From contig NC_068991.1 of the NCBI RefSeq assembly GCF_001194135.2, positions 47,586,724 to 47,650,723 on the forward strand: a DNA stretch of 64,000 nt. The letters are read 5' to 3'. The DNA is from Octopus bimaculoides (Eukaryota). Each line of letters begins with the position of its first letter. Positions within the stretch are counted from its first letter, which is position 1. This document shows, in pieces, positions 6,267-60,907 of the stretch. Below the pieces are notes generated by a model that was not told the origin of the DNA, did no database searches, and saw only the letters and a program-made list of their open reading frames with translations. A program made the translations under genes and the position numbers.

Positions 6267-7108
6267 NNNNNNNNNNNNNNNNNNNNNNNNNNNNNNNNNN
6301 NNNNNNNNNNNNNNNNNNNNNNNNNNNNNNNNNNNNNNNNNNNNNNNNNNNNNNNNNNNNNNNNNNNNNNNNNNNNNNNNNNNNNNNNNNNNNNNNNNNN
6401 NNNNNNNNNNNNNNNNNNNNNNNNNNNNNNNNNNNNNNNNNNNNNNNNNNNNNNNNNNNNNNNNNNNNNNNNNNNNNNNNNNNNNNNNNNNNNNNNNNNN
6501 NNNNNNNNNNNNNNNNNNNNNNNNNNNNNNNNNNNNNNNNNNNNNNNNNNNNNNNNNNNNNNNNNNNNNNNNNNNNNNNNNNNNNNNNNNNNNNNNNNNN
6601 NNNNNNNNNNNNNNNNNNNNNNNNNNNNNNNNNNNNNNNNNNNNNNNNNNNNNNNNNNNNNNNNNNNNNNNNNNNNNNNNNNNNNNNNNNNNNNNNNNNN
6701 NNNNNNNNNNNNNNNNNNNNNNNNNNNNNNNNNNNNNNNNNNNNNNNNNNNNNNNNNNNNNNNNNNNNNNNNNNNNNNNNNNNNNNNNNNNNNNNNNNNN
6801 NNNNNNNNNNNNNNNNNNNNNNNNNNNNNNNNNNNNNNNNNNNNNNNNNNNNNNNNNNNNNNNNNNNNNNNNNNNNNNNNNNNNNNNNNNNNNNNNNNNN
6901 NNNNNNNNNNNNNNNNNNNNNNNNNNNNNNNNNNNNNNNNNNNNNNNNNNNNNNNNNNNNNNNNNNNNNNNNNNNNNNNNNNNNNNNNNNNNNNNNNNNN
7001 NNNNNNNNNNNNNNNNNNNNNNNNNNNNNNNNNNNNNNNNNNNNNNNNNNNNNNNNNNNNNNNNNNNNNNNNNNNNNNNNNNNNNNNNNNNNNNNNNNNN
7101 NNNNNNNN
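6267..7108. other. Assembly gap (N run)
   Basis: 842 N flanked by (TA)n. Confidence 1.
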
Positions 7109-13144: not shown

Positions 13145-16100
13145 GTGATTGCTGTCTGCTACCTGCTGACTAACGCCCTTTCCCTCTTTACGGAAATTGC
13201 CGAATTGATGTAAACAAAGACATGTTGGCCATGTTGATAATCAGCAGGCAAAGCTGACTACTGGTTGGCAATCAGCTGACTACTGGTTTGGCATTTAGAG
13301 AACTTGTACCGAATGATCGCCCAGAGTTCTTTTCAGTTCCCATCTACCAAATCCATTCAGAAGGCTTTGGTCAGCCTGAGGCTCTAGTATAAGACACTTG
13401 CCCAAGGAGCCACACAGTGGAACTGAACCCAGAACTATGTGGTTGGGAAGCAAGCTTCTTACCACAAAGCCATGCCTAAATATTAATTCATAGCATAAAC
13501 AGATCCCACACATTCTCTATGTGGGTAAACACCAATAAATCAACTGGTACTTTATTGTACTGAGTCCTAGGGGGATTAAAGACAAAGTAGATGTAGGAAT
13601 GATTTGAACTCAGAACATAAAAGAAAGAAAGTAAAATACTACAAGGGGTTTAATGTATAGTTCTTCTATTTCTGCTGTTCACCACCTCTTAAATATATTA
13701 AATTCAAATATTAAAAATCCTTGTATTATTAACTTACTTTAAAAATTTGCTTTGGTCTTCGATAATTTTCTGATACCTTGGAAACCAAATCTAGATGATA
13801 AACTGGAAGAATAAAAAGGAAAAGTTGAAAGATACTAGAATGTATAAATTCCAATACATTAATTAACAGCAATTGTCTAGATAAGAATAATTTATTAAAC
13901 GATACTTACCCTCATTATCAGCATCAATATGGCACTTATCATCTTCAGTTGTGGTTTCAATTTTTGATGGATCTGATGTAGTTTTATTAAAATATCTAGA
14001 TTCTGTGATGGGATCTTCATCTATTTGTTGAATCTGATCATTCAATTTATTATCACTGACTGGCACTGTAGGCGAAGGTTGATATTTGATTGATAATTCA
14101 GAGTTATTTCCTTTGGGTAACTGTAAAAGATTTGTCTTCATAATTCTTCTCTTTGTTCCATTTGAACAATCTGAATCATTCTTATTCATCATTTCAGTGA
14201 TTGATTCTACCACACGTATATCAGCAGTTTCTTCCTTATCAGTTACTAGATTTTTATTTTCATTTCCAACTAAATTCTGTTCCTCTTCTATGTTGATTGT
14301 TATTGACTCAGTTTTCTCAACATCATCGTTACTTTCTTGATCTTTTATATTCTGGTAATTATCGTCATCTTTCACTGATTTAGAATGCTTATTATCAGCA
14401 ACTAATGCTTCTTCAACCTCTTCTAACACAATTTTACATTCATTATTGACACTTGGTGATAAACTTCTTAATTTATTGTTTTTAAAAGAAAACATTTCTG
14501 GCCTGGAAGAACAGAATAACTGGTATAAGAACATGAAGTTGTCACAAAATAATACTAAAGAATATTAATTTATATTTTCCTTTCTCAGGAACTTATATCT
14601 AAGACAATAAGCCTGTTTCAGCTTATTCATGAATTTAAGCTCTGTGACTCAATCCTTTTATTAATTACTAAAGTTTATTTATGCTTCCCCAAATCTGATG
14701 ATTCTACACTAATCCCAGTCAAAGTGTTCCATTAGACCAATCTCTATTTTTTCTTTACTGCCATGAATCTACTCCTCTGATACACTTAACAGAAAATGTA
14801 TAATGATTTCTTGCAAAAACTGCTTCACTTTAGAACTTACTCTTCTTGTCAATTCTCATAATATACTATTCTAAAGCCCATCAAAGTCTAACACTCAGTA
14901 TGACCTTTGTAAGCCAGTCACTAACTACCTGTTAAAACTGTATATGGCTACGGCAGGTCCACATTTACAGTTTGCATCTCCAGTCTAGAACACCCCCCCC
15001 CCATCTTCTTCAGAATATCAATCCAGAGGTGTGCAACCAGATGAATATCCTCCAACAGTCACCATATCTTGAACATATTGCTTCTCTGGGCATTGATACA
15101 CTAAAGTTTTGATGCCTGGCAGTTGACTTGGTAGAAGCCCATAGAATTATCCACCATCCTTCCAACAACACTTTACCCATTTTTTAAAATTCAATACCTC
15201 TACCTCTCTTAGACATGCTTATAAAATCAAAAACTATTGTAGCATTCATGACTTTCAGAAACATTTCCTTGCTTTCAGAATTGTCAAAGAATGGAATAAA
15301 CTACCTATATCAGGTGTTAGCTGACAAGACACGGCATTCTTCAAAAATTTCATGTTTCCTGAAATTTGCTAACACAGTTTTTGATGTACTTCTATACACT
15401 TTTCTCTTTATGAATCTATAACTCTTTTACTTGCTTCAGTCATTTGACTGTAGCCATGCTGGAGCACCGCCTTTAGTCGAGCAAATCGACCCCAGTCTCT
15501 TTTGCCGAACGGTTAAGTTACGGGGACGTAAACACACCAGCATCGGTTGTCAAGCGATGTTGGGGGGGACAAACACAGCACAGACACACAAACACATACA
15601 TATATATGACGGGCTTCTTTCAGTTTCCGTCTATCAAATCCAAGGCTTCGGTCGGCCCGAGGCTATAGTAGAAGACACTTGCCCAAGATGCCATGCAGTG
15701 GGACTGAACCCGGAACCATGTAGTTGGTAAGCAAGCTACTTACCACACAGCCACTCCACTGTTCACTTTTCTGTCTTTTTGCATTTTCTTTTGCATGCTA
15801 TGCACGCACTTTTGCCTACCATTGCTATCTTTCTTTACTCAACTTATTGCTGCTTTCTGTCTCCTCTTTTACACTTCTCTGTATTATACAGTGATTAAAT
15901 TAATAGAACCTTCTTCACCAGCTAACTTACTTCATAGCAGCAACAGCAGAGGAAACAGAAACAGACTGACTTGTAACAGAATTAAAATAACTGGAGACTA
16001 TTGTACAGGTTGAGTTATTTTCATTGTTAAGACACAGAGTAGAATAGAAAAGAGAAATATAAAGGCAGAAAATAGAATCCATAATAGATGTGTAGGTCTA

Positions 16101-17545
16101 GCGGTTTAATTAACATGTCTGCTTTGCAAGCATGTGGTTTCAGGTTCAGACTAACTGTATCACATCTTGGACAAATGTCTTCTATTACTGCCCAAGGCCA
16201 ACCAATACTCTGGGAGTGAAATGGAAGTCAGAAACTGTAAAAGGCTTATTATGAGTGGATTTGGTTGACAGAAACTGAATGAAGCCAAGTGTGTGTGCAG
16301 GGTTTGTTTGTGTTTATCCTTGTCTTGACATCATGTGATGATTGTAAATGAACATTACTATCATACAAGCAATGCTGCTCATTTCTTGACTTCTATGGTA
16401 AAATATTACCTAGCAGAGAAACAAGTAAGGGTTGGCAACAGAAGGTCATCCAGCTGTAGAAAATCTGCTTCAACAAATTCTGTCTGGCCCATGCAAGCAT
16501 GGAAAAATGGATGTTAAACATTGATGATGATGATAAGTATATGGCTGTATAAGTGCGTGCATGTGTGCGTTTGTGTCTTTGCTTAGTGTTGACACTTGCA
16601 TGCTGATTGTCCACCTATTGAGCTCTTTGTTGTTCAAAAGGACTAAAGGCAATATTACATTGCTTAATAACAGGTAATGGTTGGAGATAGGAAGAGTATC
16701 CAGAGGTAGAAAAACTGCTGCAACATGTTTTGTCTGAACCATGCAAGCATAGAAAAGTAGGTGTTCAAATAACAATGAAAATGTGATAAACAGTGATATC
16801 TGTATGAGGATGTAATTAACAGGGATATTTGTATGATGATTTGATAAATACAGATATCTGTATGATGATGCAATAATAAAGGGATATCCATAAAACAATT
16901 CACTTACGGATAATAAGTTATTCCTGCTGGTTTCATCTGAGAAGGATCAATTGCTGTAGTTAACAATTTTCTAGAATTTTCCCATTTTTCTGTCTCCTTT
17001 GATATCAGCTGTACCATATGTTTTGAACAAAAGTGAGAGTCAAGTGCTCTCTGCCGGTATTTTGCTGCCTTATCACGTAACTCTAGCACCTGCTTGTACC
17101 AGTCTTCATATGATATATTTTCAGTCGTTACCTTATTAAGATGGAAGAAGCAGTTTCTTGTGAAAGATGATACACTCAAACATATGTATAAATATCTGGC
17201 TTAGGCATTGCAATACTAATAACATGGTGTAGCACTCAATATACATAAACTTCTGAATAAAACATTAGTCAAGCACAGAGCAGTAATAATAAAAAAAAGA
17301 GATGACAAAGGAATAAATGATTATTTTATGAACTTCAGTACCAAACAGTTCTTCCCGTATAAGATATTGTGGACTCATAGCAGTGTGCCTGAGTAACACC
17401 TTATAGCTTCATCAGAGCCTCAAACATGAGGTGATAAGGAGTTACTCAGACACTCAACTATGAGTCCACAGCGTCTTATAGCAGAAATAGTTGTAAGCTA
17501 ATGAAGTTCATAGGATAAGCATTTATTCCTTTGTCATCTCTTTTT

Positions 17546-17578
<33 letters not shown>

Positions 17579-19198
17579 NNNNNNNNNNNNNNNNNNNNNN
17601 NNNNNNNNNNNNNNNNNNNNNNNNNNNNNNNNNNNNNNNNNNNNNNNNNNNNNNNNNNNNNNNNNNNNNNNNNNNNNNNNNNNNNNNNNNNNNNNNNNNN
17701 NNNNNNNNNNNNNNNNNNNNNNNNNNNNNNNNNNNNNNNNNNNNNNNNNNNNNNNNNNNNNNNNNNNNNNNNNNNNNNNNNNNNNNNNNNNNNNNNNNNN
17801 NNNNNNNNNNNNNNNNNNNNNNNNNNNNNNNNNNNNNNNNNNNNNNNNNNNNNNNNNNNNNNNNNNNTTCGAGCGTGGCCGTTTTCGTGCGGGTGACACG
17901 TAAAAGCACCCACTACACTCTCTGAGTGGTTGGCGTTAGGAAGGGCATCCAGCTGTAGAAACTCTGCCAAATTAGATTGGAGCCTGGTGTTGCCATCCGG
18001 TTTCACCAGTCCTCAGTCAAATCGTCCAACCCATGCTAGCATGGAAAGCGGACGTTAAACGATGATGATGATGATGATATAGGTGTGTGTATGTGTGTGT
18101 GTGTGTGCAAGCGCATGCCAAAGCAGACATTGGAATTTGGGGCTTGTCACAGCCTTCTGGCTCAGTGGTTTCTGTCTCAAACTGTCTCAAATGGGTAGGA
18201 AGTTAATGAAGATATGCATATTACATATGTATCTCCATTAACTATGGCCAATAGAGATGCTGGTTGGTCACACTTTACATATTGGTTGTTTCCAGTCATT
18301 CTTTACATTGTATAGAGATGGGGGAGAGAGAGAGAGAGAGAGAATAAAAGAGGTACAGAGTGAGTTAACATAAGAGGTGCATGATGAGTGAACATACTAG
18401 GCTTGGTGGTAGGCAATGGCTAAAAGAATGCTACACATACTCAGAGAAAGAATCATAGAGACAGAGGAGTAGGAGGAGGAGAGGAAGTAAACAACAACAA
18501 ACTGTTCAAAATGAATATAATTGCTACAATAATATTAATATACTTTTGCCATCATGGCTAATATCAGGAAATATAGCGCACATAAAATAATTATAATTTA
18601 ACTTTTATCAAATTACTTATGGTGACAAAAGTATACTTTCGAAATTACTCAAGTTGCTAATATTAATAGATGATATAAGATGGTGAGCTGGTAGAATCAT
18701 TAGGACACTAGACAAAAATGCCACTAGGCATTTCATCTATCTCCATGTTTTGAGTTCAAATTCCACTGAGGTCAATTTTGTCTTTCACCCTTTCGGGATC
18801 AATAAAATAAGTACCAAATGAGTACTGGGGTTGATGTAATTGATTTACCCACTCCCCTGAAATTGCTGGCCTTGTGCCAAAAATTGAAACCAGTGTAAAT
18901 GGATGATACATTAATGGTTAATTAGAATAATTTATCTAATTATCTTGTCAAGGAATAAGTATTCCAAATTTGACATTAAAACGAAAATAGTTTTTAATAC
19001 TAAAGTTGTGATCTTATATAATACAAGAAAAATTAAATACACCAACATATTGAAGTATTTAACAGTAGAGAAGGCTACTTTACCTGTGGGTCCTTATTTA
19101 CCCAGGCATTTTTAACATAAGCAAATTTTGAGGGTGAGTTGAAGTTTTTCTGGTATTCAGACATTAAAACTCTAAAGGAAAGCAATAATAAAAATAAC

Positions 19199-19234
<36 letters not shown>

Positions 19235-22184
19235 GGATTGTATTTAAAGCATGTGTAAATTTTTTTTATATTTAATATTTCATTTTAAATGAAAAATAAA
19301 TTCAAGTATGAACAAAAATTACTTCCATATGAAAATAAATCAAGAGAAAAAGTGGAATTTGAGAATACAAGGAACCAGTAAGTCTCCAGATGAAGTAGAG
19401 CCAGTGATCAAATAAACCAAGGACAATAATCATGTTTTTTCAAATTCTCCATGTTACATAAATATGAATATCTCAAATCAAAAGAAAACAACACTGATTC
19501 CTTTGGTATAAACACCAGATTTTGATCAAATGAAATAGTTTATTAGCAAAGAGCACCAACTCTTCAAAAATACAATTATATTAAATAACCCTTTAGCATT
19601 CAGATTCGTGATGGCACCTGCGCCCAGCGTCGCCTCTCTGGTACTTGTGCCCGCAGCATGTGTAAGGACTTTCGAGTGAGATCGTTGCCAGTGTCCCTGG
19701 ACTGGCTCTTGTGTGGGTGGCACATAAAATACACCATTTTGAGCATGGCCGTTGCCAGTACCGCCTGACTGGCCTTCGTGCAGGTGGCACGTAAAAGCAC
19801 CCAGTACACTCTTGGAGTGGTTGACGTTAGGAAGGGCATCCAGCTGTAGAAGCTCTGCCAAATCAGATTGAAGCCTGGTGTAGCCATCTGGTTTCACCAG
19901 TCCTCAGTCAAATTGTCCAACCCATGCTAGCATGGAAAGCGGACGTTAAACGATGATGATGATGATGATGATGATTTCTGTCAAGTGTAATGCTTATTTA
20001 TTCAAATTGATATGAATTAGTCATGCCTTATTTTGTAGCTTTGAGATTTCAATGATGTGATTGCTAATTTTTAGAATAATATTGTAGGGGTGAGAAGCTG
20101 TATCTGGCCAGTTTGAAATATGAAGTAGATAGATTATTTTGGTTGGATATGGCTGGTTTAAATGTTAAAGGGTTAAGGAATAAAGTCAATAAATAGTTTT
20201 TATAGAAAAAAATCAAATGACATTTTACTCACACAGGGGGACTTTTATCATTCTTGAGTTCGGGATGTGAAGTAACAGCTGTAAAATAAAATTGTCAAGA
20301 ACGCACATGAGGATATTTAAACAGGTGAGCATATTTAAACAGTCAAATATCCACATCTGGATAATCCTAATGATTTCTTATTTTGGTACATCTTCTCTAT
20401 TATAAAGTGATTAGACATATAACTCATCTCCAACAAAAAATCTCTTCTATTCTGGTTCCTTCTTTCACACTTTAACCTCTCATCCCCAAGCATAAAGCTA
20501 CCTTCTTCTACTGTAGCCCCACTCAGTCAGAGCTATGAGGCAACCTCACAGGTGCTGGTGCTATAATAAAAGTACTCAGTATATTCTGTAAAGAGACTGG
20601 TCTTAAGAAGGGCATCTAACCCTAGAAACTAAAGTCATTAGAACATCCAACAAGATGCCTTGTAGCATCTGTTCAGGTACTTTGCATTCTAAGTTCAAAT
20701 GCCACCTTCCATCAATGACCTCCTTGTGTCGTGAAATTGGCTCTTTCAGGATCTGGATAATGATGATAGGTCCCTAACATTAGGTGAGCAATGTGTCAAT
20801 TAGAACATCTCAGATACATCAAAGCCACAAATGCACTCTCCACAAAAGGGAATAAATGCTTAGAAAAAAGAAATAGGGTACAAATTAGGGAATTAAGATA
20901 GAAAAAGTAGTTACCTAACTTTGACATTCTTTGACAGAATTTGATAAAAAAAAACCAAAAAAAACATGACTATAATTAATTGAATATTTAATTAAGAAAG
21001 AAATCTCTTACATTCAAGACTTTTGGCTCTTTTCATCTGTAAAGATAAAAAATACATTTTCACTTGTAACAAACAAAAGAAAAGAATCGCGTGACATGAT
21101 CATAGTGACTTCAAATTTTGGCACAAAGCCAGCAATTTTGGTACGGCATAAATCAATTACATCAACCCCAGTGTTCAATTGGTACTTATTTTATCAACCT
21201 CGAAAGGATGAAAGGCAAAGTTGACCTTGGCAACATTCGAACACAGAATGTAAAGTCGGAAGAAATACTGCTAAGCATTTTTCACAGTGTGGAAACAATT
21301 GTGCCTGCTTGCCACCTTGTAATATGATACTATCACAGTGTAATGTTATCTAATATATATATTTCATTTATAAGGCACAACAATGTAATGCCCATGCCTT
21401 TTCCAAGAGTATTAGTAGCTGTATTGTGGAGGCGCAATGGCCCAGTGGTTAGGACAGCGGACTCAAGGTCATAAGATCGCAGTTTCGATTCCCAGACCGG
21501 GCGTTGTGAGTGTTTATTGAGCAAAAACACCTAAATCTCCATGAGGCTCTGGCAGGGGATGGTGGCGAACCCTGCTGTACTCTTCCACCACAACTTTCTC
21601 TCACTCTTTCTTCCTGTTTCTGTTGTACCTGTATTTCACAAGGCCAGCCTTGTCACACTGTGTCACGCTGAATATCCCCGAAAACTACGTTAAGGGTACA
21701 CGTGTCTGTGGAATGCTCAGCCACTTGCACATTAATTTCACAAGCAGGCTGTTCTGTTGATTCGATCAACTGGAACCCTCGACGTCGTAAGTGACGGAGT
21801 GCCAACAACAACAGTAGCTGTATCAAAGTAAAAGTGTTTCAATTAGGAATTGAAACTGTTTCATGGGCTCATTGCTCAAGATTATCCTTCTTCTACATGT
21901 AGCACTGTCTAATACATTTAGAGTATATATTAAATATCTTAATTATGATTTGATACTTCATAATATATCATGTAATATTAAAACTATAGTAGTATTACAT
22001 TACGACAGGCATGGTTGGGTGGTTAAGAAGTTTGCTTCCCAGCCATGTGGTTTTGGGTTCAGTCCCAATGCATGGTACCTTGAGAAAATGTTTTCTGCTT
22101 ATAACCTCAGGCCAACTGAAGCCATGTGAGTAGGTTTGTAGATGGAAACAGAAAGAAGCCTATTGTGTGTGTGTATATACATAC

Positions 22185-34200: not shown

Positions 34201-37200
34201 GTGAGTGGCTTTGGTAGATGGAAACTGAAAGAAGCCTGTTGTGTATGTGTGTGTGTGTGTGCGTATCTATGTTTGTTCTCCACCACCACTTGACAACTGG
34301 TGTTGGGTGTGTTTATGTCCCTGTAATATAGCAGTTCAGCAAAAGAGACTGATAGAATAAGTACCAGGCTTTAAAAGAAAATTCCTTGGGTCAATTTGTT
34401 TGACTAAAACCCTTCAAGGTGGTGCCCCAGCATGGCTACAGTCAAATGACTGAAACAAGTAAAAGCTAAAAGAACCCAGTTCTTGCTTCTTTCAACACTT
34501 ACAAAATCATGTTCAGTTTCAGCACTTTTGCTCAGCATATTGTTCATTCTTTTCTTTTGTTTGTAGACAACATTTTCAGAAAACTTTGCTTGATTTCCAA
34601 GAAGTATATATTCTTCCTCATCAGGTAGTGCCCCTCCATAGGAATGTACAGGAACTGTTCTATTTGTATGATTTTTTTCAATGTTTTCCATTTGCATCTG
34701 AGAAAAAAATTATAAAACCAGAAGAATAGACATAAACTATTGTTAATAAATCACTCACTCTAAATCAGAGACATTAATCAATCATAGACTATCAATCAAT
34801 GAGTGAGAAATACACTGCCAGTATGTTCTTTCCTAATGTAAGACACTTGGGTGAAATATAAGGGAAAATTAGCTGCTGTTTGTAATAGATTGAATTACAA
34901 TTGTTTGTACAGAGAGTGGATATGAGTTACTTACAGCAGATGTGATAGGTAGAGGGTCAAAGGGCTAACAAGGTTTAATTAGACACATACATTACAAATG
35001 TGTGTGTGTGTGTGTATGATGAGCTTCTTTCAGTTTCCATCGAACAAATCTGGTCACAGGACTGTTGTTAAAATCATTATTGTTAAAATAGCATTATTAA
35101 TGATGTACTGAGGGCAGTGGATTGTCAGAATCATTAGATTATTGATAAGAATGCTTTGTGGTTTTTCTTCTGACACTTTATGTCCCTGGTTCAAATCCCA
35201 CCAAGGTCAACTTGTCTTTCATATTTTCAGGGTTGATAAAATAAAGTACCAGTGAAGTACTGGGGCTGATGGTATCAATTAATCCTCTTTTCTCCATCTG
35301 CCTAAGTTAGAAACCATGAATACTGATGTTATTCATTAATTGAATTAGTTGAATTATTTCACTTCATGATAGAGCTTTGATATGGTCCCTTGTTATGTTA
35401 GAAATTGCAAACAAATCTCCTTATAATTATATCCTATTCTTTCAAACAACAAAAATGTCTTAGATGGTCTGATACAATCACACACTCCTGTATTAAACAA
35501 CACTAACATGAACGGAAGTAATAACACAAAACAGAAAAAGAATTCAACAACACAAACATGTAGTTTTGTGTGAGTGTTTTGTAAAATCAGGAAGTGAAAA
35601 AAGAAGTGAATAGAGTTAAAGATGTAGACATCACAGTGAATAACAATCATTGCTTGATTTAACTGAAAAGGGATAATAGTCATGTTGAAACTTTCAAAAC
35701 AAATCATAAATATTATATTATGAAAATATATCCAGACTAGAATTAAGATTGTACAAATCATTTCAAACTGAACAAAAAGGTTATATAAATATATATATAT
35801 AGTTCAAATTTACAGAAAACAAAAGACAAAGACAGATGAAGGAACAAGCAGGTGTATTAGTTTGATGCTCAGGAAGAATAGAAAAGTCTTTGATGTTTCA
35901 AGCCTACGCTCTTCAACAGAAAGAATTGAGAGCAAAAAAAAGGAGAGAAAACACAAAACAACAGAGAAAGAAAAAAATGTGTAGGAATCAAAGGTTCAAC
36001 ATGATGAAATAGCTGGAAGAAAGAGGCTGAGTGAAAGGGAGATAGTAACAGTGACTTGGCCAAACTCGGGTGTGCAAGCACATATGTGTATGTGGAAAGG
36101 GTGTGTGAGTGTGTATGTGTGGATGGGGGCAAGCGTGTATAAATATATGTGTGGGTGNNNNNNNNNNNNNNNNNNNNNNNNNNNNNNNNNNNNNNNNNNN
36201 NNNNNNNNNNNNNNNNNNNNNNNNNNNNNNNNNNNNNNNNNNNNNNNNNNNNNNNNNNNNNNNNNNNNNNNNNNNNNNNNNNNNNNNNNNNNNNNNNNNN
36301 NNNNNNNNNNNNNNNNNNNNNNNNNNNNNNNNNNNNNNNNNNNNNNNNNNNNNNNNNNNNNNNNNNNNNNNNNNNNNNNNNNNNNNNNNNNNNNNNNNNN
36401 NNNNNNNNNNNNNNNNNNNNNNNNNNNNNNNNNNNNNNNNNNNNNNNNNNNNNNNNNNNNNNNNNNNNNNNNNNNNNNNNNNNNNNNNNNNNNNNNNNNN
36501 NNNNNNNNNNNNNNNNNNNNNNNNNNNNNNNNNNNNNNNNNNNNNNNNNNNNNNNNNNNNNNNNNNNNNNNNNNNNNNNNNNNNNNNNNNNNNNNNNNNN
36601 NNNNNNNNNNNNNNNNNNNNNNNNNNNNNNNNNNNNNNNNNNNNNNNNNNNNNNNNNNNNNNNNNNNNNNNNNNNNNNNNNNNNNNNNNNNNNNNNNNNN
36701 NNNNNNNNNNNNNNNNNNNNNNNNNNNNNNNNNNNNNNNNNNNNNNNNNNNNNNNNNNNNNNNNNNNNNNNNNNNNNNNNNNNNNNNNNNNNNNNNNNNN
36801 NNNNNNNNNNNNNNNNNNNNNNNNNNNNNNNNNNNNNNNNNNNNNNNNNNNNNNNNNNNNNNNNNNNNNNNNNNNNNNNNNNNNNNNNNNNNNNNNNNNN
36901 NNNNNNNNNNNNNNNNNNNNNNNNNNNNNNNNNNNNNNNNNNNNNNNNNNNNNNNNNNNNNNNNNNNNNNNNNNNNNNNNNNNNNNNNNNNNNNNNNNNN
37001 NNNNNNNNNNNNNNNNNNNNNNNNNNNNNNNNNNNNNNNNTGCATCAACTTGCTATAAAAGCAGGTAGTAATTTTACCTTGTACTTATTCTTAGTGCAAG
37101 TTTTAAAGAGTGCAGTTCGATTTTAACAGTTATTTTCTCAAAGCTATAATGGAAGTGACAAAGGAGCATATTCGGCATATTTTGCTTTATGAGTTCAATA

Positions 37201-48052: not shown

Positions 48053-48455
48053 TACTCTTTTACTCTTGTACTCTTTTACTTGTTTCAGTCATTTGACTGT
48101 CGCCATGCTGGAGCACAGCCTTTAGTTGAGCAAGGACTTATTCTTTGGATGCCTAGTACTTATTCTATTGGGCTCTTTTGCCAAACCGCTAAGTTACAGG
48201 GGACGTAATCACACCACCATCGGTTGTCAAGCGATGTTGGGGGGACAAACACAGACACAAACATATACACAACCATACACACATATATATATATACATAT
48301 ATATGACATGCTTCTTTCAGTTTCCGTCTACCAAATCCACTCACAAGGCTTTGGTCGGCCCGAGACTATAGTAGAAGACACTTGCCCAAGGTGCCATGCA
48401 GTAGGAATGAACCCGGAACCATGTGGTTGGTTAGCAAGCTACTTACCACACAGCC
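48053..48455 (-). mobile_element. SINE family A copy
   Basis: High identity to the other copies. Confidence 0.9.
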
Positions 48456-49028
48456 ACCAAATATAAATAAAGTGAAAATATATAAAAATGCATATTATTT
48501 TACATTTTGCTGTTTTGTTGCATTTTGAAAAATAAAAATTGATTTTTATGGTTTATTATTGTTAATATTTTGAATTACAAATATATGGGGGCAGCAAAAT
48601 CTTTCAAGTGCTTAGGGCCTTTGTGGGTCTTAATCCAAACCTGATGTTGTGTATATTGTGGAGGTGTTATATGAAATTACAAGTATTGTGTGTGTGTGAT
48701 ATTTATATTGTCTACTGTGTTTGTTGGTATTTGTTCCAACTCCCTACACACTGAGTTCAAATTCCAAAGTCAACTTTGACTTCCATGATTTTGGCATTGA
48801 TAAAAGTTCACCAATACAAGGTGATGGATTGGGAGAACCATTAAAAGCATGGGGTAGGATGCCTTGCACTATCTGTGCAAGCACTTTGTAGCATGACAGT
48901 AACTTCTGTACCAAAACTGGTGACTAAAAGACATCAGCCCTTCTTTTGGACAACAATTTTTTACAAGCTAGAGTGGATCATATATCTGCAGGTGTAGATA
49001 TGTGGTCTGCCCTAATCTGTGGGGGTTT

Positions 49029-52785: not shown

Positions 52786-53065
52786 CATACATACACAAAA
52801 CGCTTAGACCCATAGACGAATCGTCAGACTCTAAAATATTGTTAAAGTACATGTAACTTATGATATAAAGTAACAAAAAATATTAAGCCTTATTTTCGTA
52901 TTCGATATAAATTATTGATAATAAATTTTGCAATTTTTTGTTTATATATATTTCATTGTTACAACGCAATTTATAGTTTTCCTTTCAATTTCTCCTTGTG
53001 ATATAATAGTTAAAAAAATATTATTTTCATTTTTTTTCGCCAGAAACCACTCTGCTTCAGCAGAA

Positions 53066-53092
53066 CAAATGGCGGCGAAAACAAGCATTTGA
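53066..53092 (+). promoter_or_regulatory. YY1-like motif (CAAATGGCGGC) overlapping a 7-codon upstream ORF (MAAKTSI*)
   Basis: ATG 53069 to TGA 53092, ending 62 nt before the LSM8 ATG; matches the AANATGGCGGC consensus. Confidence 0.45.
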
Positions 53093-53154
53093 AGAATTGG
53101 TTCAAAGATATCAAGTAAAAAGTCGTTATTTTGTGAACGACAAAGTTTTCAGAA

Positions 53155-53185
53155 ATGGCTTCAGCTCTGGAAAATTATATTAGTA
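53155..53185 (+). CDS. LSM8: LSM8 exon 1 (MASALENYIS)
   Basis: ATG at 53155; followed by the GTATCCTTT donor. Confidence 0.93.
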
Positions 53186-54879
53186 GTATCCTTTTCATAA
53201 ATATAATCTTGTTACACTCTAATTCGTACTTTGCGTCTTAAAATCAAAATGCTTTTGTTTCTTATGTGTGAATTATAAGCTCACGCCGGTTATTGCAACT
53301 AAGATTTAAAAAAAAATTTAATCTATTTTCAGGTTATTTTACTTGCTTGTTATCAACTCTATTACAAATTCTCATCGAATACTAAAAGCAAGATATATTT
53401 CGTTTTAAAAAATTCATGTATTCAATTGGACCGGTGTTACCTCTATCTATCTATCTATCTATCTATCACACCCTCCTCCGTTATGTACGTTGTGTAACAT
53501 TTATGTTGGGGTTTCGCTCTTTGCTCTCACCTAATCTTATTTTTTGTTTTATATAACTTACCCGCCGTTCTTGTTTTAGAATATTAATGTTTTCAAACAG
53601 GCTGGTTACAAATATGCCAAGGAAACGATGTCAGAACAGCGAAAGACATACAGAGAGCACGATTTATTTTGAAGGGTTTAGAGTTAGGTTTACGGTTAGG
53701 GTTTGCGTTAGGGAATTCCGTCCCTAACCGTAACGGCCGATATTTAGGTAATCGTACCGAAAGATCGCCGGAGTTTACAACTGCTTGTGAGACAACGGCA
53801 TTTAGTGAGCTAAACCAACTCTTATTTTATACAATGTTCATTAGGGAAAATACTCATAGTAGGCAGTGACATTTAAGGAAGCTAGGTTATCACGCGCGTT
53901 GCTGTTCAGGGGGTTTAACCTTCATTCTTGAAATGATTTTTTTAGGGAGCTTAGCAAACAATCTTTCGTTTCATTTTTTAATGGTCACTTTTCCATGGTT
54001 GCTTGGGTCGGACGGAATTCTTCCAGGTAGATTTTTTTTTATAATCGGATGCCCTTCCTGTCGCGCATCTTCACCTGTTTCCTAGCAACGTAATATTTTC
54101 CCTTGTCCAGATACGTTTTCATGAAAGATTGGAAATGAACCACACCACTTGTATGATGGTGACACTCGTTTACAATTATGCAATGTCAGGACAAGGAAAC
54201 AACCCACTCACACACGCACACACACACACACATACATACATGTGATGAGATTCTTTTACTTTCCTTCTACTCACAAGGCTTTGATCAGCTCAGGGTTGTG
54301 GCAGGAGACATTTGCTCAGGTCCTGCATTGTGAACCCAGAACCATTTCGTTAGAAAACAAATGTCTTAGCTACACAGCCATGCTTGAACTTAGATAATGG
54401 CGCTTAGAAATCTAGGTAAACTTAGCCCGAAATCAAGATTAGGATTGAGACTAGGGGAGCATGATATATAAAGTCTGTTGTCATGATGGAGGATTTACTA
54501 GTTATTTTTTAGACAATGATGTTTAGAGAACATTCTAAGTATCTCCAATTAACACCATCAAAATATCTTTGAGGTTGTTGCACTGACATGCTATGATCAC
54601 TCATAGCTTTGTTATTGTCAATAATGTGGTTCACTTACTCTTTTACTTGTTTCAGTCATTTGACTGTGGCCATGATGGAGCACTGCCTTTGGTTGAGCAA
54701 ATCGACCCCAGGACTTATTCTTTGGAAGCCTAGTACTTATTCTATCGGTCTCTTTTGCCGAACCGCTAAGTTACAGGGACGTAAACACATCAGCATCTGT
54801 TGTCAAGCGATGTTAGGGGGACAAACACAGACACACAAACATATACACACACATACATACATATATATAGATGTATATA

Positions 54880-54933
<54 letters not shown>

Positions 54934-57900
54934 TACGACAGGCTTCTTTCAGTTTCCGTCTACCAAATCCACTCACAAGGCTTTGGTCAGCCTAAGGCTA
55001 TAGTAGAAGACACTTGCCCAAGGTGCCACGCAGTGGGACTGAACCCAGAACCATGTGGTTGGTTAGCAAGCTACTTACCACACAGTCACTCCTACACCCA
55101 TAAAAAACAACAACAGATGTTAACTGTTTGATATTAGGGACAGGCATGGCAGTGTGGTTAAGAAGTTCGCTTCTTGACTGCTTCAGATTCAGCTCTACTG
55201 TGTAGCAGCATGGTAAGGGTCTTCTACTATAGCCCCAAGTCTACAAAAGCATTGTGAATGAATTTGGTAGACAGAAACAGAAAAAAGCTGGTTGTGTGTA
55301 TATTTCTCTATCTGTCTACTTTTCTATCAGTCTATGTATGTATGTGGATAATTGTGCTAACATTTGCATTCTGCAAAAATCACTACAAGTGGTGTTGTCA
55401 CTTCTGTCAACAAATCATCCATTCATTTCGTGGCTTTAAGATGAAATAAGAAATCTTACTTGAAAAACAGGTTAGAGTTAGTACTAGGAAGGGCATCTGG
55501 TTGTACAATAACACCTCAGTATTATATTTGTCTAACCCATGGCAGTATGGCAAAATAGATGTCAAAGAAACTAATTTCTATTTATAGATTAACTATTTTG
55601 AAATGTCGCAACTCAAGTGAAACAAAATAACATGGATTTTTGAAAGAAATAGTTTTACTGTAAAAACTCTAAAAGATTATTTGTTTAAAAAAATAGGACT
55701 TTTTGCAAATTCTGAATCTGATGTTCAGACATAAAAATATTTTGAGAACGGTTATAAAATAAAGACATAAGTTATAAATGATTGCATGCTTCAAAACTCA
55801 TATTTATGTAAAGTCTCATGTTTTATTCCTTGACACAATTCTACAAGAAACAGTGTCTATAGTGACTGCTGATGGACGAATCATTGTGGTAAGACAATGT
55901 TTTAATTAAATACACACACACACACACACACTCATGTGTGGGAGTCCATGGTTTGAATTCCCATACTAGTCTTGCAGTGTTTTCTTTGAACACCAGATGA
56001 CAACCCTTGCTGCCCATTACACTTATATGCAGATACAAGTCACTATTGGACACAGCACATAAGTGAAGTTGATTTTTAAAAAAATGATAATGTAGTAAGA
56101 GTTGAGAAAGATTTGACTGCTATTTTTAGCAGGACAAGTGTCTGCATAGAGCTATCCTCATTGGTGGGCTTGTAAGTAGACACTGTAGTGATATTAGGGT
56201 GTTCGGACCATCAAATGAGTGAACTTAGAAGGATCTGTTTGACAAATGGTGATTGAAATTGGATAAAAGCAATTTTATTTCTTAATAATCCTCAATATAT
56301 TTAAAGTGAAAATAACTAATTTTTGTCTTTCTTTTTCTGTTAGGTACATTTTTGTATGCGGGCATAAATTGATCTAATGTTCAGTTTAACATTTTTAGGA
56401 TTGGTAAATAGTTATTGATGAATAACATTTGGTGGGCTAGGTGTTGCTTTCATAATGACCACACTAGCAATAGTATTAGTTCCCATAAGTTTTTATTAAC
56501 CTGGAACATTTGCATTTACATATACACAATAGTTGAATAAATAGAACAGTATAAAAGAGATATTGAATGGAATGAATACAAGTTTTCAATGCATAATACA
56601 CTCAATTATAATATGAAGATAGTTTATATTTATTGAGAACAAATTAAGTAGAAAGACTGAGAATGACGTATCACAAAACTGACTGATATAACATCGAGTA
56701 GCACCACCTCTGTAAGGAAGTAAGTGAGAGACCATCTTCTAGAGCAGAGCAACATGGCCTAATGTATACTTTTGGATTGTTCTGCTTGTGTTCCTATTTG
56801 CCAGCTTTTTATAACCCCAATGGCAGTTCTAAAATGTTTGACCACGGTGTTTGGCAGGTGAAGTCCAGTTCTCTTGGTTACACATCAGCTGATCTGACTG
56901 GAAATATATCATAATTACACAGAAGTTCTAAGCTAGAATTCTGAGCAAAGCAGTTTCAAATCTTGGCAGAGGCATCGCTACAACATATCAATATACATAT
57001 ATATTTTTTAAAACTGAGATTCACAACTCCTTAACCAGCACTCAGTCACAAGAATAGGACACCTTTTTATTAACTGAGGCCATTTTCTGGGTTAGAATTT
57101 GGAAACCTGACTTACAAGTTCAGTGTTAACCACTTACACAGGAAAAATAATTTCATTAGATTTTTTCCATTCCTGGTCATTATTTATTACATTACGTGTG
57201 TTTCCCTTTACTCACGTGAACATATTAATAATGTTTGTTGACAAATTAATCACCATTGTTGTGTCTTGGGAGTGTCAATATACCAACAATAATAATATGC
57301 CCCAAGTTCAGATTTCAAACTAATTAACTAATCAATCATTTGTTTTACCCTTTTGATACCAACCCAGCTGAAACTGCCTCTGGCTCTGTAGTACAAATGT
57401 CTTGTTTTCAAAAGTTTTGAATTAAAATCTTCCACCAAACCTTAGTCACAATTTATGTTCCTAACACTAGCTTAATGATAACTAAATTCATCATCATCAT
57501 CGTTTAACGTCCACTTTCCATGCTAGCATGGGTTGGACGATTTGACTGAGGACTGGTGAACCGGATGGCTACACCAAGCTCCAATCTGATTTGGCAGAGT
57601 TTCTACAGCTGGATGCCCTTCCTAACGCCAACCACTCCGAGAGTGTAGTGAGTGCTTTTACGTGCCACCGGCACGAAGGCCAGTCAGGTGGTACTGGCAA
57701 CGGCCACACTCAAAATGGTGTATTTTATGTGCCACCTGCACAGGAGCCAGTCCAGCGGCACTGGCACGAATTCTTTGTTATATTCAAAATTAATTGAAAG
57801 AAACACAGAGCATCTGACCAGAAATATGGTAACAAAAGATTTAATGTGCTGGTTAAACAATCAGTTGGTTCTTTGTTAATCAAAGTTCTTTTGTCACTGT

Positions 57901-60900
57901 TCACAACCTTTCCACTGATTTAGTGACTTTCCTTCTTGGTACAAGGTCTTCAGTGACTTAGTGACTTCCCCCTCTCACTCCATAGGAGCAGACAAAAGAA
58001 CTTTGACTAACAAACAACCAATTGATTGTTTAACCAGCACATTAAACAAATGATCGAATAGTTAATTGGTTAGATATATAATCAATTGACTAACAAAGAA
58101 GTGGAATTGAACCTGTGCTTGTGTTATTATTATTGATTTAATGAGGCGGTGAGCTCACAGAATCATTAGCATGCTGGACAGAATGCTTAGCGGCATTTCT
58201 ATGTTCTGAGTTAAAATTCTGCCTAGGTTGACCTGGCTTTTCATCCTTTCGGAGTCGATAAAATAAGCACTGGTCTCGATGTAATTGACTAGTTTCCTTC
58301 CTTGAAATCTCAGGCCTCGTGCCTATAGCAGAAAAGATTATTATTGGTATAATGACTCTCCCAAGACACAATAGTTGTTGTTTCAACACATGAATTCACT
58401 TCAAGAATCTTGCAAACCAAATACAAATACCAAGTAATCATCATTGCATGTTAAGTAAAGTATGTATTTATATTTCAGGGTACTTTGAAAGGTTTTGATC
58501 AGACGATTAACTTAATCTTAGATGAAAGCCACGAAAGAGTGTTTAGCTCTACTTCTGGAGTTGAACAAGTTGTATTAGGACTATACATAATCCGTGGTGA
58601 CAATGTGTAAGTATAGCTTCTTTCCATATAAAAATTAAAGAAGTTTAACCATCCAATGATAAAATCAGTCTGTGTACCTTCAAAGGCCAGAGGTACAGCC
58701 TCAACCTCCAGACCATATATAAAAAAGGTTCAAATGTACAAAAAACAGAAGACAGACAGGTGAGGTAACAACAAACAAGGTGTATTAATCTCAGAAGTTT
58801 TGAGTCTATGTTCCTTGAAATAAAAGAATGAGGAGAGAAAACAGAGAGAGGAAAAACGTGTCTGGATTAACGGTTTCACATGTTGAATCGACTGATAAAA
58901 AAAACTTGTAAAAAGGCATTATACCAAAATTCTTTTTCCATTTGTGTTCATTCGTCTGTTTAGCCCTTCTATTCCCGTATTTCTGTTGAAATACACAGCC
59001 TTTACTTCACTTAATTTTGAAAATGAAGCATTTAGTAAAATAAATTTGTTATTATTAAGCTAGTATTTGGATTATAAAATAACATGAAATTTTGATGGGA
59101 GGTTTTAATTTAGATCAATTTAAGACAAGAAGTTTCTGTCATTGAATTAGGGGCGGGGTCAGGCAGGTTGCTATCTGTTTTCCTAATGCTAGTATTGGGG
59201 ATATATTTGAATCTGGATTTTATGGCCAGATGCTCTTCCTGTCACCAACCATTGCCTGTATTTTCAAGTGAGGAATTTTTCATTTATTCAACCATCTTTC
59301 ACTGTTTCACTCAAACAAAGTCGTGGGAGACACACTCACACATAATACATATATAAAGTGGTTGGTGTTTGGAAGGGCATCTAGCTGTAAAAACCATGCT
59401 AAAACAGGTCTCGCTGGTGCCACATAAAAAGCACTCAGTCCACTCTGTAAGGTGGTTGGTATCTGAAAGGCATCCAGCCAAAACGACTGCTGAAACTGAA
59501 GCCTGGTGCAGTCTTCCGCTTAGCCAGCCCCTATCAAACCATCCATCCCATGCCAGTATGGAATCCATATGTAAAATGATGATAATGATATATCACTGAC
59601 GCTGTCCTTTTAAGATATATATGGCATAAATTTCTCCATGATTCTCCACTTGATTGTATGTGGCATGCTATTAGTGTCCAAATCCCATACATGACTAGCA
59701 AACTTCATAACCATACAAACATATATGTACGTATTATGTATGTTTATATGTTAGTGTCTCCTTATCTTGACAATCAGGTACCCTTCCTGTTTCCAAGCAA
59801 GGTGTGCCAGACATGTTTTCACAGAATATTAGAAACTGATGATTCTGCTTATATGACAGTGACACTGCTTTACAACTATCACATGACATCAAGACTAGGA
59901 GACACAAACATAGACACTCACATGCACATGTATACATATGTATACATATGTATACATGATGGGCTTAGAGTTTCCATCTATCAAATTCACTCACATGGCT
60001 TCAGTTGCCCTGGGGCTATAGTAGAAGACACTTGTCCAAGGTGCTATGCAATTGGATTGAACCTGAAACCATGTGGTTGGGAAGCAAACATAACCATACC
60101 TGTGCTCAGCTACACCTGTTTACTTTGCAGTATTTCTTTTGGCTGTTTACATTTTGGGTCTGAGTTGGTTAAGCATTCTAACCCTTTTGATACCAATCCA
60201 CCAGAGACTACCCCTAGATTTTTGATACAAAAGTGATGTAAAGTAAAACTGTCTATCAAAATTACATGCTAAGTTAGTATGAAACACCAGTTTAATTATA
60301 ACAAAGCTCATCATCATCATCATCATCATCGTTGTTTAACTTCTGCTTTCCATGTTGGCTTGGGTTGAATGGTTTGATGTGGAGCTAGCTGGCAGGAAGC
60401 TGTCCAGACTCCAATTGTCTGTTGTGGCATGGTTTCTATAGCTGGATGGCGTTTCTTGTAAATTCTTCATTCTTTTAATTGAAACAAAGGCAGTGTATAT
60501 TAATAGAAATATAGTAACAAAAGGGTTTATCTAAAGTTAATTTTACTACAGAATAAAAAGTTTTGAATGGTACAACAATGCACTATATAATACAAAAAAA
60601 TGCACTATATACCTGTTGTAATTTAGTTATCCAAAGTCCAATGATATTTCGGAATACAATTCCTTCTTCAGATATTCATAGATGGAGTCGCTGTTTTCCA
60701 ACGGCTGTAGATCTATTTATTTTGTTCTGCATGATTATGTCTTCTATGTTACGATTGTTCACAGAATAATAGTTATGTAGTGTTGAATTAATCTGAAACT
60801 ATCTTATGTCTTTCAGGGCGGTGATTGGTGAAATAGATGATGATGCAGATTCTTACTTGGACCTAAACAGCATAAGAGCAGAGCCCCTTAACCCTGTAGT

Positions 60901-60907
60901 GCATTAG
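53155..60907 (+). CDS. LSM8: U6 snRNA-associated Sm-like protein LSm8, 4 exons, 96 aa
   Basis: Exons 53155-53185, 55848-55888, 58479-58606, 60817-60907 (291 nt) give MASALENYISKTVSIVTADGRIIVGTLKGFDQTINLILDESHERVFSSTSGVEQVVLGLYIIRGDNVAVIGEIDDDADSYLDLNSIRAEPLNPVVH*, close to recalled human LSM8. Confidence 0.97.
53186..55847 (+). other. U12-type (minor spliceosome) GT-AG intron, LSM8 intron 1
   Basis: 5' site GTATCCTTTT at 53186; branch site TTCCTTGAC at 55826-55834 with the branch A 14 nt before the AG; no polypyrimidine tract. Confidence 0.93.
54634..55092 (-). mobile_element. SINE family A copy with internal (TA)n expansion
   Basis: High identity to the other copies; lies in the LSM8 minor intron. 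Confidence 0.9.
55848..55888 (+). CDS. LSM8: LSM8 exon 2 (KTVSIVTADGRIIV)
   Basis: caag acceptor, GTG|gtaaga donor, 41 nt. Confidence 0.95.
57316..58075. mobile_element. MITE whose left TIR is split by a TTAA-type MITE (57344-57844), itself containing a SINE (57488-57768)
   Basis: 57316-57345 plus 57840-57895 together are the reverse complement of 57991-58075; the insertion point is TTAA. Confidence 0.75.
58479..58606 (+). CDS. LSM8: LSM8 exon 3 (GTLKGFDQTINLILDESHERVF...IRGDNV)
   Basis: tatttcag acceptor, GT|gtaagt donor, 128 nt; Sm1/Sm2 motifs. Confidence 0.97.
60817..60907 (+). CDS. LSM8: LSM8 exon 4 (AVIGEIDDD...PVVH*)
   Basis: tctttcag acceptor, TAG at 60905-60907. Confidence 0.97.

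What the first reader, a model, noticed from the sequence alone, without database searches (positions are those of the whole stretch)
53186..55847. Minor-spliceosome (U12) intron in LSM8
Seen: 5' GTATCCTTTT and branch TTCCTTGAC 14 nt from the AG, both textbook U12 signals, in a 2.66 kb intron full of SINEs. Established: LSm2-8 binds the 3' end of U6 and U6atac snRNAs. Inference: a spliceosome subunit that depends on minor splicing could form a feedback or rate-limiting switch. It also implies a functional minor spliceosome in this species.
Basis: partly seen in the sequence, partly recalled or inferred. Interest (0 to 1): 0.7.

Follow-up and report, generated by a model that had tools for sequence, protein, structure and literature searches.

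The report
Conserved U12-type intron in octopus LSM8
The first intron of the octopus LSM8 gene is a genuine minor-spliceosome (U12-type) intron, but it is the ortholog of a minor intron already catalogued in human and mouse LSM8 and shared across animals, so it is correct but ordinary.

Summary
Window 53186-55847 (+) is intron 1 of a four-exon LSM8 gene whose 96-aa product is identical to Octopus LSm8. It starts with GTATCCTTT and carries TTCCTTGAC, with the branch A 14 nt from the intron end. Each motif alone is not above chance in 64 kb. Their placement at the only reading-frame-compatible splice sites is about 3e-8 by composition. With matrices built from 83 catalogued human minor introns, the donor ranks 1st of 127,978 positions and the branch site 7th. 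Introns 2 and 3 score strongly negative.

The same intron, at the same codon and phase with the same U12 signals, is present in Argonauta, oyster, amphioxus, frog, bear, sea urchin, horseshoe crab and a soft coral. An oyster transcript shows it spliced at exactly those sites. Human and mouse LSM8 minor introns are already listed in the Minor Intron Database supplement and in a 2007 survey.

Land plants have a U2-type intron at the homologous position, and a sand fly gene has no introns. LSM8 therefore does not need U12 dependence. The proposed feedback switch is untested. About 43% of the intron is interspersed SINE-like repeat. Verdict: real, already known, low interest.

The parts
53155..53185 (+). 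LSM8 exon 1, coding part (ATG ... AGT A; MASALENYIS plus the first base of codon 11)
   Evidence: Unique spliced-translation solution; tblastn match; sequence read
53186..55847 (+). LSM8 intron 1, U12-type GT-AG, 2,662 nt, phase 1 within codon 11
   Evidence: same position and type in 9 other animal loci
53186..53194 (+). U12-type 5' splice site GTATCCTTT
   Evidence: Scores 15.0 bits, rank 1 of 127,978 positions, 57th percentile of 83 human minor introns; the 12-mer GTAGTATCCTTT is identical to the catalogued human GBP3 minor 5' splice site
55826..55834 (+). U12 branch-point sequence TTCCTTGAC; inferred branch adenosine at 55833, 14 nt from the intron end
   Evidence: Scores 12.3 bits, rank 7; distance; conserved in Argonauta as TTCCTTAAC
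55846..55847 (+). 3' splice site AG (isoform X1, the 96-aa conserved protein)
   Evidence: the product is identical to P0121, Octopus LSm8 X1
55852..55853 (+). Alternative AG 6 nt downstream; using it reproduces exactly the annotated 94-aa Octopus isoform X2 (KTV replaced by M)
55848..55888 (+). LSM8 exon 2
55889..58478 (+). LSM8 intron 2, U2-type (GTAAGA ... TTTCAG), phase 0
   Evidence: U12 matrix score -26.4
58479..58606 (+). LSM8 exon 3
58607..60816 (+). LSM8 intron 3, U2-type (GTAAGT ... TTTCAG), phase 2
   Evidence: U12 matrix score -17.4
60817..60907 (+). LSM8 exon 4, coding part with TAG stop
54632..55103 (-). Full-length SINE-like interspersed repeat inside intron 1: head at 55100-54937, internal AC/AT microsatellite at 54825-54935, body at 54820-54635
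   Evidence: a 455-nt colinear copy lies at 48069-48457
55135..55318 (+). Second copy of the SINE-like head, inverted relative to the first; together they fold into a long hairpin
53971..54380 (.). Older, diverged interspersed-repeat fragments inside intron 1

Best explanation
Window 53186-55847 is the first intron of the LSM8 gene of an Octopus species. It is a constitutive GT-AG U12-type intron removed by the minor spliceosome.

Shown here:
- The exon-intron structure.
- Orthology of position, phase and type across Cnidaria, Mollusca, Chelicerata, Echinodermata, Cephalochordata, Amphibia and Mammalia.
- Precise excision at the orthologous sites in an oyster transcript.

Inferred from established knowledge of U12-dependent splicing, not tested here:
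- The U11/U12 di-snRNP recognises the intron as a unit. U11 pairs with the TATCCTTT donor. U12 pairs with UUCCUUGAC and bulges the A at 55833; the G keeps pairing as a G-U wobble.
- The AG 14 nt downstream is chosen by its short distance from the branch site, not by a polypyrimidine tract.
- U4atac/U6atac.U5 then joins and U6atac replaces U11 at the donor.
- Two transesterifications join A|AA to make codon 11 (Lys).

Retention of the intron would end the reading frame after 28 codons. The intron was inherited from at least the cnidarian-bilaterian ancestor. It is the same intron as the one catalogued in human and mouse LSM8.
For: - Sequence at the borders and a unique spliced model.
- Protein identical to Octopus LSm8 X1 and 99% identical to Argonauta LSm8; LSM domain.
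- Matrices from 83 human minor introns, LSM8 left out: donor ranks 1st of 127,978 positions, branch site 7th, both at the 57th percentile of real minor introns. Introns 2 and 3 score -26 and -17.
- Joint chance about 3e-8.
- Ten animal loci, nine genera, carry GTATCC plus a TCCTTRAC-like site 12-16 nt from the 3' end, at CDS nt 31, phase 1.
- Octopus-Argonauta similarity inside intron 1 is limited to the donor end and from the branch site onward.
- The oyster transcript contig L003 is spliced exactly at the predicted sites.
- Human and mouse LSM8 minor introns are catalogued (Olthof 2019 supplement; Chang 2007 Table 1).
- Octopus sinensis is among the minor-intron species compared by Larue & Roy 2023, who report relative minor-intron enrichment in molluscs.
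- Premature stop on retention.
Against: - No RNA from the window's own species was examined.
- No U11, U12, U4atac or U6atac gene lies in the window, and the rest of the genome could not be searched.
- Each motif alone is within chance for 64 kb.
- An annotated isoform uses an AG 6 nt downstream. The acceptor is therefore not unique, although the donor and branch site are shared.
Confidence: 0.95

Rival explanations
1. The intron is an ordinary U2-type GT-AG intron whose ends resemble U12 signals by chance.
For: Each motif alone occurs at chance frequency in the window. The termini are GT-AG. The last 20 nt are 65% pyrimidine.
Against: GTATCC is a poor U1 match, whereas the gene's other donors are GTAAGA and GTAAGT. 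The joint chance is about 3e-8. The U12 signals are kept in ten animal loci that do not align elsewhere in the intron. In plants, where the intron at this position really is U2-type, the donor is GTAAGT or GTGAGT and there is no TCCTTRAC. The human and mouse orthologs are curated as minor introns.
Confidence: 0.02
2. Besides being a U12 intron, it is a selected regulatory device. Slow or limiting minor splicing of LSM8 couples the LSm2-8 supply, and hence U6 and U6atac snRNP stability, to minor-spliceosome activity.
For: The U12 type has been kept at this site from cnidarians to mammals. The published model holds that minor introns limit expression because U6atac is unstable (Younis 2013 abstract; regulatory switch model summarised in PMC6865273). 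Several other Sm and LSm genes (SNRPE, LSM5, LSM12) also carry U12 introns. Alternative 3' site use around this intron is seen in Octopus annotation and in human tissues (category CAT8).
Against: No experiment or expression data here bear on it. Octopus and Argonauta share nothing in the intron beyond the core splice signals, and the gene holds no second U12 donor-like motif. There is thus no sign of an extra regulatory element like the U11-binding enhancers of SNRNP48 and RNPC3 (those enhancers are cited from memory). Plants use a U2-type intron at the homologous site and a sand fly gene has no introns, so LSM8 function does not need the dependence. The loop would be positive: less minor splicing gives less LSm8, which gives less U6atac. 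It would not be homeostatic. Larue & Roy 2023 argue that neutral processes explain much of minor-intron retention.
Confidence: 0.1
3. The principal mRNA uses the downstream AG (55852-55853) rather than 55846-55847, so the intron is 6 nt longer than stated.
For: A 94-aa Octopus isoform X2 is annotated in two Octopus species and is reproduced exactly by this acceptor.
Against: The 96-aa form keeps the K/R-T-V residues found in all animal orthologs. The branch-to-AG distance is 14 nt for the upstream AG, within the 12-16 nt seen in every ortholog, against 20 nt for the downstream one. Argonauta lacks the downstream AG (AAACTG). Either way the donor, branch site and U12 classification are unchanged.
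Confidence: 0.08

Closest known systems
Minor (U12-type) intron 1 of human LSM8 (chr7:118184255-118185653, ENST00000249299) and mouse Lsm8, as catalogued in the Minor Intron Database supplement of Olthof et al. 2019 and listed by Chang et al. 2007
   Same: Same gene and GT-AG subtype. The donor is ACC|GTATCCTC in human and mouse, and TCAACC|GTATCCTC in bear at CDS phase 1 after ...ENYIN. The branch site is TTCCTTGAC in mouse. It is the first of three introns, and the other two are U2-type.
   Different: The octopus signals are closer to consensus (GTATCCTTT and TTCCTTGAC, against human GTATCCTCA and TTCTTTGAT). The intron is longer (2,662 nt against 1,399 nt) and carries octopus-specific SINE-like repeats.
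U12-type GT-AG introns in general
   Same: Extended donor RTATCCTT, branch site TCCTTRAC close to the 3' end, no reliance on a long polypyrimidine tract, and a single minor intron among major introns in a housekeeping gene.
   Different: Nothing atypical was found.
LSM8 intron 1 of land plants (Brassica, Marchantia)
   Same: Homologous position and phase: after L-E-S-L-V/I-D, phase 1. The other two animal intron positions are also shared.
   Different: U2-type signals (GTAAGT or GTGAGT, no TCCTTRAC). The plant gene has one extra intron. This implies a change of intron type at a conserved position; the direction was not resolved here.
U12 introns in other Sm and LSm genes (SNRPE, LSM5, LSM12)
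   Same: Spliceosome core-ring subunits whose own mRNAs need the minor spliceosome (Chang 2007 Table 1).
   Different: These are different genes, and positional homology was not examined here.
Autoregulatory U11-binding splicing enhancers of SNRNP48 and RNPC3 (cited from memory, not checked here)
   Same: A spliceosome-component gene whose expression is tied to minor-spliceosome activity.
   Different: Those elements are tandem U12 donor-like motifs that drive alternative splicing. LSM8 here has a single donor motif and no second high-scoring U12 donor in the gene.

Membership tests
U12-type (minor spliceosome) intron, GT-AG subtype | Extended 5' splice site |RTATCCTT(T) | tested here: met
   GTATCCTTT at 53186-53194. 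It scores 15.0 bits with a matrix from 83 human minor introns, rank 1 in the window.
U12-type (minor spliceosome) intron, GT-AG subtype | Branch-point sequence TCCTTRAC | tested here: met
   TTCCTTGAC at 55826-55834; 12.3 bits, rank 7 of about 128,000 positions.
U12-type (minor spliceosome) intron, GT-AG subtype | Short branch-to-3'-splice-site distance (about 10-20 nt) | tested here: met
   14 nt from the A at 55833 to the intron end; 12-16 nt in nine orthologous loci.
U12-type (minor spliceosome) intron, GT-AG subtype | No strong polypyrimidine tract between the branch site and the AG | tested here: inconclusive
   ACACAATTCTACAAG follows the branch site with no uninterrupted pyrimidine run. 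Overall pyrimidine content from -22 to -3 is 65%, partly from the branch motif itself.
U12-type (minor spliceosome) intron, GT-AG subtype | Poor fit to U2-type signals compared with the neighbouring introns | tested here: met
   Introns 2 and 3 have GTAAGA or GTAAGT donors and TTTCAG acceptors, and score -26 and -17 on the U12 matrix. No formal U2 matrix was run.
U12-type (minor spliceosome) intron, GT-AG subtype | Orthology to a curated minor intron | tested here: met
   Same codon and phase as the bear and frog introns. Their donor matches the catalogued human and mouse LSM8 entries.
U12-type (minor spliceosome) intron, GT-AG subtype | Excision depends on the U11, U12, U4atac and U6atac snRNPs | not testable with these tools
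   This needs knockdown or in vitro splicing. Only exact excision at the orthologous sites in an oyster transcript was shown.
U12-type (minor spliceosome) intron, GT-AG subtype | Minor snRNA genes are present in the genome | not testable with these tools
   None lies in this 64-kb window, and the Octopus genome is not in any searchable collection here. The literature analyses minor introns in Octopus sinensis.
LSM8 (U6 snRNA-associated Sm-like protein 8) | Sm/LSM fold domain and orthology to LSm8 rather than to other LSm paralogs | tested here: met
   Pfam PF01423, E=3.3e-20. The 96-aa product is identical to Octopus LSm8 X1 and 80-84% identical to named LSm8 of molluscs, hemichordates and vertebrates.
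Autoregulatory minor-splicing switch (SNRNP48/RNPC3-like) | Conserved tandem U11-binding donor-like motifs or another conserved intronic regulatory element | tested here: not met
   There is one RTATCCTTT in the gene and no other high-scoring U12 donor within 53-61 kb. There is no Octopus-Argonauta conservation inside intron 1 beyond the core signals.

The most novel reading that the evidence does not exclude
The U12 dependence of LSM8 is not a frozen accident. It would be a selected coupling, kept for more than 600 million years in animals, in which minor-spliceosome output sets the supply of the LSm2-8 ring. That ring stabilises U6 and U6atac, giving a positive, potentially bistable loop. 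In octopus the loop might be further modulated by the alternative acceptor 6 nt downstream and by the long double-stranded RNA formed by the inverted SINE pair inside the intron.
Probability: 0.07. Interest if true: 0.55.

Novelty: already known. Interest (0 to 1): 0.12.

Why it matters
As it stands the finding mainly serves as a positive control. A reader without tools correctly recognised a minor intron from sequence alone, and the call survives quantitative and comparative tests.

The biology is established. LSM8 is a catalogued minor-intron gene in mammals, and molluscs are known to keep many minor introns.

The comparative by-product has modest value. The intron position is shared by animals and land plants, but the intron type differs. 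The U12 type has been held from cnidarians to mammals and is lost together with all introns in a sand fly. This gives a clean single-gene example for studying U12/U2 type switching and minor-intron loss.

If the U12 dependence of LSM8 were shown to feed back on U6atac levels, it would matter for how minor-spliceosome activity is set. Nothing here shows that.

Tried and rejected
- Rfam at gathering thresholds over the whole window found nothing, so no snRNA genes can be used as evidence.
- Rfam at a permissive E-value on the intron returned only microsatellite artefacts far below the thresholds.
- ARAGORN found no tRNA-like sequence, so a tRNA origin of the SINE-like repeats is not confirmed.
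- Motif-only statistics do not show significance for the donor motif. I dropped that line in favour of joint placement, matrices and conservation.
No transcript from the same species could therefore be fetched.
- The rodent protein P0059 turned out to be an intronless retrocopy and was discarded for intron comparison.
- A literature search for the Arabidopsis LSM8 locus together with U12 gave nothing relevant. I fetched plant loci directly instead.
- tblastx of the Argonauta upstream region against the window did not identify the neighbouring MDM1-like gene convincingly.
- Pfam found nothing in the longest non-LSM8 ORFs.
- I considered whether ATATCCTTT at 28686 (+) marks a second, AT-AC minor intron. 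No gene model or matching branch site supports it, and it was not pursued.
Full report
**The observation**

Reading the window directly, GTATCCTTTT starts at 53186, immediately after ...GAAAATTATATTAGTA. TTCCTTGAC lies at 55826-55834, and the AG at 55846-55847 is followed by AAACAGTGTCTATAGTG....

A tblastn probe with an LSM8 sequence placed four coding blocks on the + strand. An exhaustive search for GT/GC-AG and AT-AC/AG splice combinations that translate to the full protein gave exactly one model:

- Exons: 53155-53185, 55848-55888, 58479-58606 and 60817-60907.
- Intron 1: 53186-55847, 2,662 nt, phase 1 in codon 11.
- Introns 2 and 3: ordinary GTAAGA...TTTCAG and GTAAGT...TTTCAG.

**The gene and the organism**

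- The 96-aa product has an LSM domain (Pfam PF01423, E=3.3e-20).
- It is 99% identical to Argonauta hians LSm8.
- It is identical to protein P0121, which sources name LSm8 isoform X1 of Octopus bimaculoides, O. vulgaris and O. sinensis.

The window therefore comes from an Octopus species. Which one cannot be told from this evidence.

**Is it more than chance?**

Taken alone, the motifs are not remarkable in 64 kb of AT-rich DNA. RTATCCTTT occurs twice against 1.6 expected. TTCCTTRAC occurs seven times against 1.16 expected, and two of those copies share a repeat terminus.

The weight comes from three other lines:

- **Placement.** Given exon borders fixed by the reading frame, base composition gives about 1e-4 for the donor and about 3e-4 for a branch motif in the right 9-nt window. 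The joint value is about 3e-8.
- **Matrices.** I built log-odds matrices from the 5' splice sites and branch sites of 83 catalogued human minor introns, leaving LSM8 out (Olthof et al. 2019 supplement). I scanned both strands with them. The LSM8 donor scores 15.0 bits, the best of 127,978 positions. The branch site TATTCCTTGACA scores 12.3 bits, rank 7. Both fall at the 57th percentile of the real human set. Introns 2 and 3 score -26.4 and -17.4 at the donor.
- **Conservation**, described next.

**Comparison with orthologs**

I fetched genomic LSM8 loci and solved their structures the same way. An intron sits after CDS nucleotide 31 (phase 1, codon 11) in all of these:

- Argonauta
- Pacific oyster
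- two amphioxus assemblies
- a frog
- a sea urchin
- the soft coral Xenia
- a horseshoe crab
- a bear, where the numbering is shifted by an N-terminal extension in the gene model

Every one has a GTATCC donor and a TCCTTRAC-like motif 12-16 nt from the 3' end. Xenia has the weakest branch site, GCTTTAAC. In all of them the other two introns are U2-type.

Between Octopus and Argonauta, similarity inside intron 1 is confined to two stretches. One is the donor end. The other begins just upstream of the branch motif, at 55825, and runs into exon 2. The interior does not align. That pattern is what purifying selection on U12 signals would produce, and it supports an active minor spliceosome in octopods.

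An assembled oyster transcript (L003) joins exon 1 to exon 2 exactly at the predicted sites. This is RNA-level evidence in a mollusc ortholog.

**What is already known**

- Chang et al. 2007 list LSM8 among human genes with U12-type introns, together with SNRPE, LSM5 and LSM12.
- The supplement of Olthof et al. 2019 (the Minor Intron Database paper) gives the human intron as chr7:118184255-118185653, with donor ACC|GTATCCTCA and branch site CTTTCTTTGATT. The mouse intron has donor ACC|GTATCCTCC and branch site CGTTCCTTGACT. This matches the bear locus solved here, TCAACC|GTATCCTC, so it is the same intron.
- Larue & Roy 2023 include Octopus sinensis in their minor-intron conservation comparison and note relative minor-intron enrichment in molluscs.

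The finding is thus an ortholog of a catalogued minor intron in a lineage known to keep minor splicing.

**Deeper history**

Using a plant-like LSM8 probe, I retrieved real plant proteins and two loci. In Brassica and the liverwort Marchantia, intron 1 lies at the homologous position and phase, after LESLVD or LESLID. There it is U2-type, with a GTAAGT or GTGAGT donor and no TCCTTRAC. The other two animal intron positions are also shared with plants.

So the position is very old, but the type differs between kingdoms. The direction of the change is not resolved here. A sand fly LSM8 gene is intronless. LSM8 therefore functions with a U12 intron, with a U2 intron or with no intron at this site.

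**Mechanism**

The structure and signals are shown here. The splicing pathway is inferred from established knowledge of U12-dependent splicing:

- The U11/U12 di-snRNP recognises the donor and branch site together.
- The branch adenosine at 55833 is bulged. The G of TTCCTTGAC keeps pairing with U12 as a wobble.
- The AG is selected by proximity to the branch site.
- U6atac replaces U11 at the donor, and catalysis follows.

If the intron is retained, the reading frame ends after 28 codons.

Octopus annotation also holds a 94-aa isoform X2. It is reproduced exactly by using the AG 6 nt downstream, at 55852-55853, with the same donor. That AG is absent in Argonauta, and the isoform removes residues conserved in all animals. 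I take it as a minor alternative. In human tissues, Olthof et al. likewise record low-level use of a cryptic 3' site at this intron, though one that extends the exon.

**The feedback idea**

The general notion that minor introns limit the expression of their host genes is published (Younis et al. 2013; summary). Nothing here tests it for LSM8, and several observations weigh against a specific device:

- No conserved intronic element exists beyond the core signals.
- There is no second U12 donor-like motif in the gene.
- The dependence is dispensable in plants and in a fly.
- The loop would reinforce rather than correct a drop in minor splicing.

I give it about 10%.

**'Full of SINEs'**

43% of the intron recurs elsewhere in the window. 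There is one roughly 470-nt element on the minus strand, 54632-55103, with an internal AC/AT microsatellite. A diverged head copy lies on the plus strand at 55135-55318, and older fragments lie at 53971-54380. The head occurs at 22 places in the 64 kb.

By eye the head has box A- and box B-like motifs, but ARAGORN and Rfam do not call it tRNA-like. The two inverted copies fold into one long imperfect hairpin, -162.6 kcal/mol with z=-10.3.

**Verdict**

The intron is already known in kind and in gene. The regulatory speculation is untested and somewhat disfavoured. Interest is low.

Noticed in passing
window 54887-55343 (+), inside LSM8 intron 1: Two copies of the SINE-like head lie in inverted orientation (arms 54887-55018 and 55212-55343, 72% complementary). 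RNA 54925-55325 folds into one long imperfect hairpin, MFE -162.6 kcal/mol, z=-10.3. It is a possible double-stranded RNA in the pre-mRNA, for example an editing substrate.
   Followed up: partly
window 55852-55853 (+): An AG 6 nt inside exon 2, used with the same U12 donor, reproduces exactly the annotated 94-aa Octopus LSm8 isoform X2 (KTV replaced by M). The AG is absent in Argonauta.
   Followed up: yes
L014:838-939 (Brassica) and L015:838-1521 (Marchantia): Plant LSM8 has its first intron at the homologous codon and phase, but with U2-type signals. All three animal intron positions are shared with plants, which have one extra intron.
   Followed up: yes
L012 and L013 (Phlebotomus) 1001-1291; L006 (Myodes) 1501-1791: The sand fly LSM8 gene is a single uninterrupted ORF, so all introns were lost. 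The bank vole hit is an intronless copy, probably a retrocopy.
   Followed up: partly
window 11064 (-), 20172 (-) and five other sites: TTCCTTRAC is over-represented in the window (7 against 1.16 expected). Two copies share the repeat end TTATTCCTTAACCCTTTARCATT, so part of the excess comes from an interspersed element and not from branch sites.
   Followed up: partly
window 53050-53112 (+): A block upstream of the LSM8 ATG is strongly conserved with Argonauta. It contains AAATGGCGGCG (a YY1-like core, judged from memory) and a short ATG...TGA upstream reading frame at 53070-53093.
   Followed up: no
window 28686 (+), 43924 (-), 6157 (-), 3638 (-): Other sites score well as U12 donors (12-13.5 bits), including GTA|ATATCCTTT at 28686. 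None could be tied to a gene model or to a properly placed branch site.
   Followed up: no
window 13863-14534 (-): A 223-aa acidic, serine-rich ORF with no Pfam match. It may be a large exon of the neighbouring minus-strand gene. In Argonauta the upstream neighbour is MDM1-like, head to head with LSM8.
   Followed up: no
L002:1-1642 and L004/L005:1-578: In oyster and amphioxus the gene head to head with LSM8 encodes a ribosomal protein L2-domain protein (Ribosomal_L2). In Argonauta the neighbour is MDM1-like. The oyster-amphioxus arrangement may be old synteny.
   Followed up: no
window 7838-8221 (+), 17476-18006 (-), 19526-19897 (-): Repeated ORF fragments share LAEFLQLDALPNANHSKSVVGAF. They belong to another interspersed repeat family, unrelated to the SINE-like element. 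The assembly gaps (N runs) at 6267-7108, 17579-17867 and 36158-37040 are flanked by microsatellites.
   Followed up: no
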